DNA of 63,515 nt, filler included, from Octopus bimaculoides (Eukaryota), in the NCBI RefSeq assembly GCF_001194135.2. It is 8 parts of 8 records of this genome, joined end to end, with 100 filler letters (N's around TTAATTAATTAA, not from the genome) between each part and the next. Parts side by side here need not be neighbours in the genome. Positions count along the whole stretch, not along the records: positions 29,236 to 59,289 come from NC_069005.1; 7 more parts are not named here. One strand, written 5' to 3'. This document shows, one piece after another, positions 42,876 to 58,935 of this stretch; within the stretch, counting starts at the first letter, position 1, and each line of letters begins with the position of its first letter. The position numbers were made by a program, and so were the translations under genes. A model generated the notes under the pieces. That model searched no databases. It was not told the origin of the DNA and saw nothing but the letters and a program-made list of their open reading frames with translations.

Positions 42876-43329
42876 ATTAGATTAACTTTTATTTGTGAAA
42901 TACAGTTGTTCTGAATTTGCTGCAGAAAGTGGTCTGTGTTTGTGGCGGTGAGTGAGGGGCGCTAGGAACGTGGCCCGGGTATCAGAGAGGCGACAGCCTG
43001 AAAAAGTTTGAGAATAAAGTACTTTGACTGCAATATTTTTTCTCTCCATCATCTGGAGAGACAGATTTTGATAAATTACCATCTCATTTATACAGCTCAT
43101 GGGCAATTTTTTAATTTAGGGTAAGTTTTTAAAAGCTATGTGTTATCTTTGGTGTACTAAGTACATAAATTGAAAGCTGAGATGCAACTAGGTGATGGTA
43201 AAAAGAAAAAAGACCTAATTTACATAGATTATAATGCGGAGTACTACAATAATGGGATGCAAGTTTTACCTTATGCATCATTATCTTAAAGTTTTTAAAA
43301 AATGACTTACACATCGAAAGGTTAAGACT

Positions 43330-46098: not shown

Positions 46099-47297
46099 CT
46101 ACACCTCCTCTTCTAGATCTATCTCTTCAAAGTCTCTGAAATCGTCAGGCCATGGAACAGAAGATACACCTGTAAGAAAGTTGTTCAATTCTCTCACATC
46201 GTATTTTCTTTCCTTCTCCGAACTTCCTTTACGACTGCTCGGAACACTGTCTGGCTCTTGCGATCCACGTTGCTCCAGAGAAGAATATTTTTCCTCAGTT
46301 GAATTATTGATCCTCTCAATGTCAGTGATTGGGCTGCCTTTACCTGAATCATACGAGGCTTTAGAACAGGAACAAATGTCTGGACAGGGCGATACAGAAA
46401 TTAATTCTACATTTCCATGACCAACATTTTTTACACTTGGACCCAAAATGTGTTTTAAATTTCGCAAAGAAAGACATTCTCCTTCCTCTTGGTCAGATGC
46501 TTGTTCTACAGTATGATAGGATTCACTTTTCGTGCTATCCGTGCCTGAATCAACATAGCTACCTAGGTCTGAATCATACGACAACTTTGAACCGTGCATT
46601 GGTTCTGCCGTATAAAAGGAATCAGAATCGGAGGCAATTTCGTCATCAAGTTCTTGAATAACCTTTTGATCATGGAAATCGTATAATGATTGGAAGCTAA
46701 CAGCTTTTGCTTTTGAGTCAGAAGCGCTTCTAACTTTTGTGTCATGAACAATCTTTGGTTCACAGATATCATCTTTGAGGCGGAAGGAAACACTTTTGGC
46801 TCTAACAATAGGAGTGAAATCTTCATTTGAATCGAGAATAACCTTTGGTTCAATGATGTCGTCCTCGGAACGGAAGTAAACATTTTTAGATTTTAAGTCG
46901 GGAGACATTGTTGCGATTAAATTAGTAGCAGAGTTTGATCTGTGTAAGGATTCTTGCGATGGAGTTGAATCAGATTTTGCGTTTAAATCAGCGTCGGGGC
47001 TGACATTCGAACTTTGAACAACTTGTTGAGAGACGTGTATTTTACGTGGTAAGAAATCGGTTTGCGTACTTGAGTCCACAGTGGGCATTTGACCGAGGCA
47101 AGGAATAATTTCTTCTACAGACGCATCATTTCTTGAGATGCAACAGCAAAAGAAAAAATTCATGAAACAATGACCGATCCTCGAGAAAAGGTTGATCAGA
47201 TAATCTCCCAAGTTGAGATTTTCGTCCGGAGGCTTTTCGAGCATTTTCAAAAGATAATCCAAGCACGGACGAAATATCAATAATACAATCAGTAAAA
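46099..47297 (-). CDS. Terminal coding exon of an uncharacterised membrane protein with a long acidic, Ser-rich tail
   Basis: An open, non-repetitive frame of about 398 codons. Acceptor TTCTACTTAATCAG at 47298 (phase 1) lies just after an in-frame stop. The exon begins with hydrophobic LLIVLLIFRPC. An alternative start is ATG at 47244. Confidence 0.85.
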
Positions 47298-47783
47298 CTG
47301 ATTAAGTAGAAGTAGCATGGATTAATTCATTTACAAAGGTTATCAAATGAACTGTTTCGAAATCTGAAATTTATGAATATAAAATATCAACCAGAATTCG
47401 CTTAGGAACGTCAATTCGAAATGTGAATGAATTGAAGTTTGAGGTTATTTCTCAAGCCAGACCCATCGCTACGTCATGTTCCACTTGTTGATTATGACGT
47501 AGTACGCACTGAAATTTTTAACACCTCCTTTGTCGCATCAAGGATACAGATTTACACAGAGACAAAACACTTCATCTCACGTTGCTCTGCGGTCACTTCG
47601 ACACCTGAGGCGTACCTGTTCGGGTACGTCGTCGGTTGGATGGAGGGAGAGTGAGCTAATGTGCAGCACAAACATTTGATCACAATAACCAAATCCTTTG
47701 TGCAGGTCGTTCGGCAAAAGCTGAAAGGAAATACATCGCCTTCGACGGGAGAGGCTATCATCATCCTCATCATCATTATTATT

Positions 47784-58441: not shown

Positions 58442-58935
58442 TTACACTTTTGCACCGTTCTGGCGACAACCATCCAACCTCCACAACGGCTCTGTTTTGG
58501 GTAATCGTTGCTGATGAGGGTTTATGAGGTCGGAGTGCAGCTCCTGATTCAACCTCTTTTTATAGTTGTCTTTTGCACGACATACAGAGTAAACTTTGGG
58601 ATTATTCTTTGACATGCCGGTCCTTACACAGCACTGAAGCACTAGGAAACTAAATGTTTTGCTCAAAAGAACATGCTGATCCCAGAACAAGCTGATCCCA
58701 AGGTTTTCTGCAATTTTACGCTGACTATATCCACCTTCAGAATGACCCGCAATGTGGCCTCTTTGGAATTCAGACAGTTCCAAGGCTACTTTTGTACATG
58801 GCATGATTAAACAGTCGCATATAGAATCTGAAACATAAAAGTGTCAATTAATAAGAAATATAAACATTTACAAGTTAGAATAAACAGAAAACGATGTTTT
58901 ATGGGGTGTCTATTTACTTCTAACATATGTGTGTA
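58442..58935 (-). mobile_element. Internally deleted Tc1-like transposon
   Basis: ORF start MPCTKVALELSEFQRGHIAGHSEGGYSQRKIAENLGI is a Tc1 N-terminal HTH pattern. No DDE core is present. One terminus-like end lies near 58900-58935. Confidence 0.65.

What the first reader, a model, noticed from the sequence alone, without database searches (positions are those of the whole stretch)
46621..46890. Three exact 30-aa tandem repeats, each starting with an RVxF-type PP1-docking motif
Seen: SKNVYFRSEDDIIEPKVILDSNEDFTPIVR / AKSVSFRLKDDICEPKIVHDTKVRSASDSK / AKAVSFQSLYDFHDQKVIQELDDEIASDSD. The period is exactly 90 nt. The retained positions are K-x-V-x-F, a downstream D and a K-V/I-I/V pair, while the linkers have diverged. 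Known: [RK]-x(0,1)-[VI]-x-[FW] binds PP1, often helped by a downstream hydrophobic pair, and Ser phosphorylation within the motif blocks binding. Inference: selective retention of the motif across diverged repeats suggests a multivalent PP1-recruiting module at a membrane, which is unusual.
Basis: partly seen in the sequence, partly recalled or inferred. Interest (0 to 1): 0.75.

Follow-up and report, generated by a model that had tools for sequence, protein, structure and literature searches.

The report
Repeated PP1-docking-like motif, octopus orphan gene
A real three-fold 30-residue repeat in a disordered, octopus-only protein of unknown function carries sequences that look like docking sites for protein phosphatase 1, but only the middle copy is kept in other octopus species, so one docking site is plausible and a three-site module is not supported.

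Summary
On the minus strand, window 46621-46890 encodes three 30-aa units in exact 90-nt register, each with K-x-V-x-F at positions 2-6. "Exact" applies to the period only: the units are 27-37% identical. The repeat lies in a 381-aa coding exon (46099-47244, minus), Octopus bimaculoides LOC106874399, annotated "uncharacterized protein". The family was found only in octopus: a long and a short paralog, with no Pfam or PDB match.

The protein is predicted to be disordered, is very acidic and Ser-rich, and has no transmembrane segment. Its only membrane lead is an N-terminal amphipathic helix ending in a Cys triplet.

Repeats 1 and 2 have a VxF-x5-I[I/C]-x-P layout with the same spacing as the PP1-bound segment of NIPP1 (PDB 3V4Y).

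- Repeat 2 keeps the motif in all species (KSVSF, KTVSF, KSVTF).
- Repeat 1 loses the Val in one lineage (KSDFF).
- Repeat 3 has the motif only in this species (KTTNL and KITNF elsewhere).

The repeat region evolves almost neutrally (dN/dS 0.6-1.0), while three other modules are constrained (0.07-0.25).

Verdict: one plausible, untested PP1-docking site. Conserved multivalency and a membrane-spanning context are not supported. Modest interest.

The parts
46099..47244 (-). Coding sequence of the 381-aa protein (MLEKPP...DLEEEV*), O. bimaculoides LOC106874399. Essentially one coding exon.
   Evidence: ORF. O. vulgaris has in-frame TGA TAA 11-12 codons upstream of the ATG, no AG between them and the ATG, and a 1-nt indel further upstream, so the CDS starts at this ATG. 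The RefSeq models of O. bimaculoides and O. sinensis start at the same Met. The dN/dS pattern shows protein-level constraint.
46801..46890 (-). Repeat unit R1 (residues 119-148), SKNVYFRSEDDIIEPKVILDSNEDFTPIVR
   Evidence: KNVYF is at 46873-46887 and the II pair at 46852-46857. The orthologues read KSVVF (O. vulgaris) and KSDFF (L001).
46711..46800 (-). Repeat unit R2 (residues 149-178), AKSVSFRLKDDICEPKIVHDTKVRSASDSK. This is the only unit whose motif is kept in every orthologue.
   Evidence: KSVSF is at 46783-46797 and the IC pair at 46762-46767. The orthologues read KTVSF and KSVTF. Of the first 14 residues 7 are invariant across the three species (K, V, F, L, D, I, E); of the last 16 none is. 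dN/dS is 0.33-0.54.
46621..46710 (-). Repeat unit R3 (residues 179-208), AKAVSFQSLYDFHDQKVIQELDDEIASDSD
   Evidence: KAVSF is at 46693-46707 and the FH pair at 46672-46677. The orthologues read KTTNL and KITNF. Only 1 of the first 6 residues is invariant, against 14 of the remaining 24. By parsimony the window state is derived, through 4 substitutions.
47137..47211 (-). N-terminal predicted helix (residues 12-36) ending in a Cys triplet (CCC at 47140-47148). Candidate S-acylated peripheral membrane anchor, by inference.
   Evidence: This is the only long helix in the AF2 model. The highest Kyte-Doolittle 19-residue mean is 1.34, below the usual transmembrane cutoff of about 1.6. The hydrophobic moment is 0.60 at mean hydrophobicity 0.32. 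dN/dS is 0.07-0.22. F..CCC.S.N..S.EEIIPCL is invariant in both paralogs.
46459..46620 (-). The strongly constrained acidic, Ser-rich module that directly follows R3 (residues 209-262). It contains SFYTAEP (46600-46620, phospho-FFAT-like) and DSGTDS (46534-46551, DSGxxS-like).
   Evidence: dN/dS is 0.13 and 42 of 54 residues are invariant. The short paralog keeps SFCTANE and DSGVET. FFAT definitions come from PMC8306308 and PMC7705450. The degron consensus is from general knowledge.
46102..46179 (-). Constrained C-terminal module (residues 356-381), LTGVSSVPWPDDFRDFEEIDLEEEV
   Evidence: 21 of 26 residues are invariant and dN/dS is 0.17-0.25.
42962..42997 (-). Alternative small terminal exon (AVASLIPGPRS*) used by the RefSeq isoform. 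It is joined from the GAG|GTG donor at the last codon of the main exon.
   Evidence: P0010 (XP_014777610.1) ends ...DLEEEAVASLIPGPRS. The exon was found behind a ctttttcag acceptor.

Best explanation
The finding is a tandem triplication of a roughly 30-residue unit. It sits in the intrinsically disordered body of an octopus-restricted, very acidic, Ser-rich protein, O. bimaculoides LOC106874399 (381 aa).

The ancestral unit carried a VxF core followed by a hydrophobic pair. The short paralog still has a single copy (TVSF / SVAF).

In the long paralog the middle copy, K-[ST]-V-[ST]-F-x-L-x-[DE]-D-I-[CY]-E, is the one selection has kept. It most likely acts as an RVxF-PhiPhi short linear motif that docks one PP1 catalytic subunit in the cytosol. 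PP1 would then act on the dense Ser/Thr clusters of the same protein or of its partners. Phosphorylation of the Ser/Thr inside the motif could switch docking off.

The flanking copies R1 and R3 are drifting duplicates. R1 may still add a second, weaker site in O. bimaculoides and O. vulgaris. R3's match in O. bimaculoides is specific to that lineage.

What is shown: the repeat, the motif matches, the predicted disorder, the absence of a transmembrane segment, and the conservation pattern. What is inferred: PP1 binding, the phospho-switch and membrane anchoring through the Cys triplet.
For: - The repeat is real.
- There are three loose RVxF matches, and R2 and R3 also match the stricter patterns.
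- The R2 motif is kept in O. bimaculoides, O. vulgaris, O. sinensis and the SRR11869391 species. Conservation within R2 is confined to the first 14 residues, 7/14 against 0/16.
- AF2 gives mean pLDDT 32.6 with no structure across the repeats.
- There is no transmembrane segment and no N-terminal signal-like hydrophobic stretch.
- The F-x5-PhiPhi spacing lies within the 5-8 residues described for PP1 regulators, and degenerate pairs such as VC and IN are accepted (PMC10731240).
- The NIPP1 chain bound to PP1 reads RVTF-SEDDE-II-NPED (3v4y_B). Anchored on the Phe, the 11 residues after R1 score 22 against NIPP1 (composition P = 6.5e-4) and those after R2 score 11 (P = 0.02).
- PP1 regulators are often PP1 substrates themselves, with Ser sites enriched near the RVxF (PMC11536154).
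Against: - No binding test was possible.
- The loose RVxF pattern occurs by chance in about 25% of proteins (PMC4794898) and in 30% of shuffles of this protein.
- dN/dS of the whole repeat region is 0.6-1.0, and 0.33-0.54 even for R2.
- The short paralog's unit has no basic residue before VxF, so the ancestral unit was not a canonical RVxF.
- NIPP1 was picked as comparator after the fact. Its similarity is weak or absent for the L001 units (P = 0.10-0.20) and for R3 (P = 0.66).
- An acidic-II-x-P element also sits at residues 44-48. It is invariant in both paralogs and has no VxF in front, so conservation of 'EDDI.E' may serve another purpose.
Confidence: 0.45

Rival explanations
1. The repeat is a weakly constrained duplication in a disordered linker, and its RVxF matches are incidental. 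The conserved island in R2 (K-[ST]-V-[ST]-F..L..DI.E) serves something other than PP1. It could be a basophilic-kinase site (R/K at -3 of the Ser/Thr) or a docking strand for a different partner. The functional business of the protein lies in the three constrained modules.
For: - dN/dS is 0.6-1.0 in the repeats and 0.07-0.25 in the N-terminus, residues 209-262 and the C-terminus.
- The fraction of invariant residues in the repeats (0.23-0.50) equals the background of the unconstrained parts (0.47).
- The R2-R3 linker has indels of 3 and 5 aa.
- The motif is lost in R1 of L001 and in R3 of O. vulgaris, O. sinensis and L001.
- The short paralog has no canonical RVxF at all.
- The loose motif is common by chance.
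Against: - Conservation in R2 is concentrated exactly on the RVxF-PhiPhi stretch.
- The VxF core is also present at the homologous place in the short paralog.
- The flanks and spacing fit known PP1 docking.
Confidence: 0.35
2. One reading: in O. bimaculoides all three units are working PP1-docking sites. Together they form a multivalent module that holds several PP1c molecules, or raises avidity, at a membrane.
For: - There are three in-register matches in this species, with K, V and F among only five columns invariant across the units.
- Each unit has a hydrophobic pair at F+6/+7.
- The window's R3 state arose through 4 clustered substitutions that create KAVSF, which would fit selection for a new site.
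- The CCC cluster could anchor the protein to a membrane.
Against: - The R3 motif is absent from the three other sequences, and R1 lacks the Val in one.
- KNVYF has Tyr at the x position, which the stricter consensus patterns exclude (patterns from memory).
- The substitution cluster is not significant (P = 0.24).
- The region evolves nearly neutrally.
- There is no transmembrane segment.
Confidence: 0.12
3. The units are copies of the N-terminal 'acidic-II-x-P ... DF-x-P' module (residues 42-68). Their conserved element is the acidic-Ile-Ile part, for example a sorting or other trafficking signal, and not the VxF.
For: BLASTP aligns R1 (SEDDIIEPKVILDSNEDFTPIV) with the paralog's N-terminal SEEEIIPCLDLNKSHESNKPSV. 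EEIIPCL is invariant in all five family members. E/D-D-I is invariant in R1 and R2 of all three species.
Against: The similarity is short and was seen in one local alignment only. R3 and the short paralog's unit lack the acidic-II element yet keep other unit features. No known motif was matched by any test here.
Confidence: 0.08

Closest known systems
NIPP1 (PPP1R8) PP1-binding segment, RVTF-SEDDE-II-NPED (PDB 3V4Y)
   Same: Both have a VxF core, then five mostly acidic residues, then an Ile pair, then x-Pro. R1 reads NVYF-RSEDD-II-EP and R2 reads SVSF-RLKDD-IC-EP, in a disordered segment.
   Different: There is no homology beyond about 16 residues. No FHA domain, Pfam hit or PDB hit was found. 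NIPP1 has one site and is nuclear. Here there are three diverged tandem copies in an orphan protein.
Membrane-targeted RVxF regulators such as GM/PPP1R3A (RVSF, Ser in the motif phosphorylated by PKA) and GADD34/PPP1R15A (membrane-binding helix, internal repeats, KVRF). From general knowledge.
   Same: They combine a membrane-association element, a disordered region and an RVxF motif with a phosphorylatable x residue. GADD34 also has internal tandem repeats.
   Different: There is no sequence relationship. In those proteins the repeats do not carry the RVxF, and the membrane element is a transmembrane or amphipathic helix shown by experiment. Here the anchor is only inferred from a CCC cluster.
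Proteins with several RVxF-type motifs (IRF7 with two, enterovirus 2C with three, Rif1, several Plasmodium PP1 interactors)
   Same: They carry more than one candidate PP1-docking motif in one polypeptide (PMC10807198; PMC4794898; PMC3937515 listed).
   Different: Their motifs are not copies produced by a tandem repeat with a fixed 30-residue period.
Phospho-FFAT motifs of VAP partners (STARD3, Kv2.1 and others). This concerns the module next to the repeat.
   Same: An acidic tract (LDDEIASDSD, the end of R3) is followed by S-F-Y-T-A-E-P. That gives Phe at position 2, an aromatic residue at 3, Thr at 4 and Ala at 5 of the EFFDAxE core. The short paralog keeps it as S-F-C-T-A-N-E.
   Different: The published position weight matrix was not available, so no FFAT score was computed. 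About 10% of human proteins score as candidates. Binding is untested.

Membership tests
RVxF-type PP1-interacting proteins (RIPPOs/PIPs) | Match to [RK]-x(0,1)-[VI]-{P}-[FW] | tested here: met
   KNVYF, KSVSF and KAVSF at residues 120, 150 and 180. The pattern is as quoted in PMC4794898.
RVxF-type PP1-interacting proteins (RIPPOs/PIPs) | Match to the more specific consensus patterns | tested here: inconclusive
   KSVSF and KAVSF match the two 5-residue stricter patterns and KNVYF does not (Tyr at x). None matches the 6-residue extended pattern [KR][KR][ACHKMNQRSTV]V[CHKNQRST][FW] quoted in PMC4794898. I wrote the two 5-residue patterns from memory.
RVxF-type PP1-interacting proteins (RIPPOs/PIPs) | Motif lies in a disordered region exposed to the cytosol or nucleus | tested here: met
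   AF2 pLDDT is below 50 across the repeats, from an alignment of only 3 sequences. The highest Kyte-Doolittle 19-residue mean is 1.34 and the N-terminus is acidic.
RVxF-type PP1-interacting proteins (RIPPOs/PIPs) | Val and Phe conserved in orthologues | tested here: inconclusive
   R2 is kept in 4 of 4 sequences. R1 is kept in 3 of 4 (KSDFF in L001). R3 is kept in 1 of 4.
RVxF-type PP1-interacting proteins (RIPPOs/PIPs) | Secondary PhiPhi motif 5-8 residues C-terminal of RVxF | tested here: met
   II, IC and FH each lie after 5 residues. The definition and the degenerate variants come from PMC10731240. The spacing equals that of NIPP1 in 3v4y_B.
RVxF-type PP1-interacting proteins (RIPPOs/PIPs) | Direct binding to PP1c that is lost on V/F-to-A mutation | not testable with these tools
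   No multimer prediction or experiment was available.
NIPP1 / PPP1R8 family | Homology to NIPP1 (FHA domain, overall sequence) | tested here: not met
   No Pfam family was found. There was no PDB sequence hit at E<=10 with the repeat region. The exhaustive HMM search found only octopus proteins.
Integral membrane protein | Hydrophobic segment long and hydrophobic enough to span a bilayer, or a signal peptide | tested here: not met
   The highest Kyte-Doolittle 19-residue mean is 1.34, for LFSRIGHCFMNFFFCCCIS. The paralog's equivalent segment contains Asp. The hydrophobic 'LLIVLLIF' upstream of the ATG is non-coding.
Phospho-FFAT VAP-binding motif (neighbouring module) | Core x-F-[FY]-[ST]-A-x-x after an acidic tract, in a cytosolic disordered region, conserved | tested here: inconclusive
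   SFYTAEP follows LDDEIASDSD, is invariant in three species and is retained as SFCTANE in the paralog. No PWM score was computed because the matrix is not held.

The most novel reading that the evidence does not exclude
An octopus-specific, S-acylated, membrane-anchored disordered scaffold combines one to three RVxF-PhiPhi PP1-docking units with an immediately adjacent phosphorylation-dependent FFAT-like VAP-binding motif and a DSGxxS-type degron. Docked PP1 would then erase the protein's own phospho-switches. That would give a self-limiting tether or timer at ER-membrane contacts, with the number of working PP1 sites varying between octopus species through gain and loss of motifs within the repeat.
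Probability: 0.08. Interest if true: 0.6.

Novelty: new member of a known kind. Interest (0 to 1): 0.3.

Why it matters
If R2 binds PP1, this gives a first functional handle on an unannotated, lineage-restricted octopus gene family. It would also be a compact example of short linear motifs being born, duplicated and lost inside a tandem repeat over short evolutionary distances: R2 kept, R1 decaying, R3 lost or regained. It does not touch a long-standing open question. RVxF candidates are very common, membrane-targeted and multi-motif PP1 regulators are known, and nothing here demonstrates binding.

Tried and rejected
- Plus-strand reading of the coordinates gives only stops.
- Tandem Repeats Finder finds nothing at DNA level, even at score 30.
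- Pfam on the whole ORF and on the short paralog gives no family.
- phmmer of the repeat region against PDB chains at E<=10 gives nothing.
- Three word-index homologue searches and one exhaustive HMM search found only octopus sequences, so there is no link to any named family.
- The idea that this is the last exon of a transmembrane protein is rejected. The upstream open frame 'SVLLIVLLIF...' is not conserved in frame. O. vulgaris has a 1-nt indel and TGA TAA with no AG before the ATG.
- The paralog is not in this 30-kb piece (tblastn).
- The 'read-through' C-terminus of P0002 is a database translation artefact in which TAG was read as Q.
- Selection or gene conversion creating R3's KAVSF was tested through clustering of window-lineage substitutions. 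It is the densest cluster, but P = 0.24, so not significant. The codons do not match R1, R2 or the L003 paralog as donors.
- FFAT scoring could not be done because the published matrix is not held.
- Two structural PP1 papers could not be read and one literature query timed out.
- No paper mentions the gene or protein accessions, or the SRA run.
- Fold search was not attempted because the model has pLDDT 32.6.

Full report
**Observation**

The coordinates are right but the strand is minus. The plus-strand translation is full of stops.

The three units (46801-46890, 46711-46800, 46621-46710) are in perfect 90-nt register. They are diverged: 49-54 of 90 nt and 8-11 of 30 aa are identical pairwise. 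Tandem Repeats Finder reports nothing.

A protein self-comparison shows the repeat is not chance. There are 22 identities in a 60-aa window at offset 30. In 500 shuffles the maximum over all offsets had mean 12.5, sd 1.0 and a highest value of 18.

Five columns are invariant across the units (K2, V4, F6, D11, K16), and three of them are the motif positions.

**The gene**

The repeat sits in a 393-codon ORF. Its coding part starts at the ATG at 47244 and ends at 46099.
- O. vulgaris has in-frame TGA TAA 11-12 codons upstream of that ATG with no AG in between. It also has a 1-nt indel further up, so the hydrophobic 'LLIVLLIF' that the raw ORF suggests is not coding.
- The product is identical over residues 1-380 to O. 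bimaculoides XP_014777610.1, 'uncharacterized protein LOC106874399'.
- That RefSeq isoform splices from the last codon (GAG|GTG) to a small exon at 42962-42997.

**The family**

Three word-index searches and one exhaustive HMM search of 1.8 billion representatives found only octopus proteins:
- The long form is present in O. bimaculoides, O. vulgaris, O. sinensis and the species of run SRR11869391.
- A short paralog is present in O. bimaculoides (A0A0L8H8A8, 152 aa) and in SRR11869391 (179 aa).

There is no Pfam family, no PDB sequence match and no mention in the paper library.

**Nature of the protein**

It has 15% Ser and a net charge of -30. The highest Kyte-Doolittle 19-residue mean is 1.34. 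AF2 gives mean pLDDT 32.6, with one helix at residues 12-36 and nothing across the repeats. The alignment behind that model holds only three sequences.

That helix is amphipathic (hydrophobic moment 0.60, mean hydrophobicity 0.32). It ends in a Cys triplet that is invariant in both paralogs.

I infer a cytosolic, disordered protein that may be held at a membrane by S-acylation. A transmembrane topology is not supported.

**Evolution**

Synonymous distances give (O. bimaculoides, O. vulgaris) as sisters, with the SRR11869391 species outside: dS is 0.14, 0.40 and 0.38.

| Module | dN/dS | Invariant residues |
|---|---|---|
| Residues 1-52 | 0.07-0.22 | 46/52 |
| Residues 209-262 | 0.13 | 42/54 |
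| Residues 356-381 | 0.17-0.25 | 21/26 |
| Repeat region 119-208 | 0.6-1.0 | 7-15 of 30 per unit |

The repeat region is no more conserved than the other unconstrained stretches.

State of each unit in the orthologues, in the order O. bimaculoides / O. vulgaris and O. sinensis / SRR11869391 species:

| Unit | Motif state | Note |
|---|---|---|
| R1 | KNVYF / KSVVF / KSDFF | Val lost in the outgroup |
| R2 | KSVSF / KTVSF / KSVTF | 7 of the first 14 residues invariant (K, V, F, L, D, I, E), 0 of the last 16 |
| R3 | KAVSF / KTTNL / KITNF | 1 of the first 6 residues invariant, 14 of the other 24 |

The R2-to-R3 distance is 30, 27 and 25 residues in the three lineages.

The short paralog has one unit, with TVSF or SVAF and no basic residue in front.

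By parsimony the window's R3 motif is derived, through four substitutions in nine bases. That is the densest cluster on this lineage, but a cluster that dense arises somewhere in the CDS in 24% of random placements. Because the paralog has VxF at the homologous place, the history of R3 stays unresolved.

**Does it look like PP1 docking?**

The loose consensus [RK]x0-1[VI]{P}[FW] is matched three times. It occurs by chance in about a quarter of all proteins (PMC4794898) and in 30% of shuffles of this protein.

Several features go beyond the bare match:
- The region is predicted to be disordered.
- Basic residues precede the motif and acidic residues follow it.
- A hydrophobic pair lies five residues after the Phe (II, IC, FH). 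This is inside the 5-8 residue window of the PhiPhi motif, which tolerates pairs such as VC or IN (PMC10731240).
- The PP1-bound NIPP1 chain in PDB 3V4Y reads KRKNSRVTFSEDDEIINPEDVD. R1 (KNVYF-RSEDD-II-EP) and R2 (KSVSF-RLKDD-IC-EP) share its spacing and the x-Pro after the pair.

Anchored on the Phe, the following 11 residues score 22 for R1 (composition P = 6.5e-4) and 11 for R2 (P = 0.02). For R3 and the outgroup units the score is at chance level.

NIPP1 was chosen as comparator after the fact, so this is a lead and not proof. A further caveat is that an acidic-II-x-P element also sits at residues 44-48. It is invariant in both paralogs and has no VxF in front.

**Conclusion on mechanism**

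The best-supported reading is one conserved RVxF-PhiPhi-type docking site (R2) for a PP1 catalytic subunit. It lies in a cytosolic disordered scaffold, flanked by two drifting copies of the same unit.

Docked PP1 would plausibly act on the Ser-rich constrained module that starts right after R3. PP1 regulators are commonly PP1 substrates, with Ser sites enriched near the RVxF (PMC11536154). Ser/Thr at the x position allows the usual phospho-switch, as established for RVxF motifs (general knowledge).

All of this is inference, since binding could not be tested. I put it at 0.45.

**Comparison with what is known, and novelty**

The protein is not a member of any named family. It works, at best, like the many disordered RVxF regulators.

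Membrane-targeted PP1 regulators are known (general knowledge). So are proteins with two or three RVxF motifs, such as IRF7 and enterovirus 2C, Rif1 and Plasmodium interactors. The 'unusual' element therefore reduces to the motifs being copies within a tandem repeat.

I file it as a possible new member of a known kind and score interest at 0.3.

Noticed in passing
window 46600-46650 (-), residues 199-215: The end of R3 (LDDEIASDSD) is an acidic tract directly followed by S-F-Y-T-A-E-P. This fits a phospho-FFAT-type VAP-binding core (EFFDAxE with Thr at position 4). It is invariant in three octopus species, is kept as S-F-C-T-A-N-E in the short paralog, and lies in the most constrained module (dN/dS 0.13).
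   Followed up: partly
window 46534-46551 (-), residues 232-237: DSGTDS (DSGTES in the outgroup, DSGVET in the short paralog) matches the DSGxxS type of phosphodegron known for beta-TrCP substrates. The consensus is recalled from general knowledge and was not tested.
   Followed up: no
window 46102-46179 (-) and 42962-42997 (-): The C-terminus VPWPDDFRDFEEIDLEEEV is almost invariant. Its last codon GTG, followed by TAG, doubles as a GT splice donor. The RefSeq models of O. bimaculoides and O. sinensis join it to a small exon encoding AVASLIPGPRS*, found behind a ctttttcag acceptor about 3.1 kb downstream. Two alternative C-termini are therefore possible.
   Followed up: partly
window about 47245-47560 (-), especially 47370-47510: The roughly 300 nt upstream of the ATG are more conserved among the three octopus orthologues than the repeats are. 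Several blocks are shared even with the upstream region of the short paralog (L003): TACGTCACAAT, ATTTCGAnTTGACG...AAGCGAnTTCT, and a TATA-like TTTTATATTCATAAA. There are three TGACG/CGTCA half-sites, two of them forming an inverted pair at 47469-47503. This is a candidate compact CRE-type promoter or 5' UTR.
   Followed up: partly
window 47101-47115, 46846-46863 and 46756-46773 (-): An acidic-Ile-Ile/Cys-x-Pro element occurs three times: EEIIP at residues 44-48 (invariant in both paralogs), DDIIEP at 128-133 and DDICEP at 158-163. BLASTP aligns R1 with the paralog's N-terminal SEEEIIPCL segment, so residues 42-68 may be an older 'unit 0' of the same repeat.
   Followed up: partly
window 46693-46707 (-) compared with L002 and L001: R3's KAVSF differs from the orthologues' KTTNL and KITNF by four clustered substitutions (ACT ACT AAC to GCT GTT AGC), three of them A-to-G. 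It is the densest window-lineage cluster in the CDS but is not significant (P = 0.24). The short paralog has VSF at the homologous place, so the direction of change is ambiguous.
   Followed up: yes
L001 (SRR11869391 contig) 1839-1841; L002 9846: There are database and annotation artefacts. P0002 carries a 21-aa tail because its TAG stop was translated as Q. O. vulgaris CAI9740536.1 starts at internal Met53 although the upstream ATG and reading frame are intact.
   Followed up: yes
window 58442-58804 (-): A 120-aa ORF has a weak helix-turn-helix match (HTH_23, E = 0.0045, below the Pfam cutoff), probably a transposase remnant. The rest of the 30-kb piece is mostly microsatellite-like repeats and N gaps, with no other convincing gene.
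   Followed up: partly
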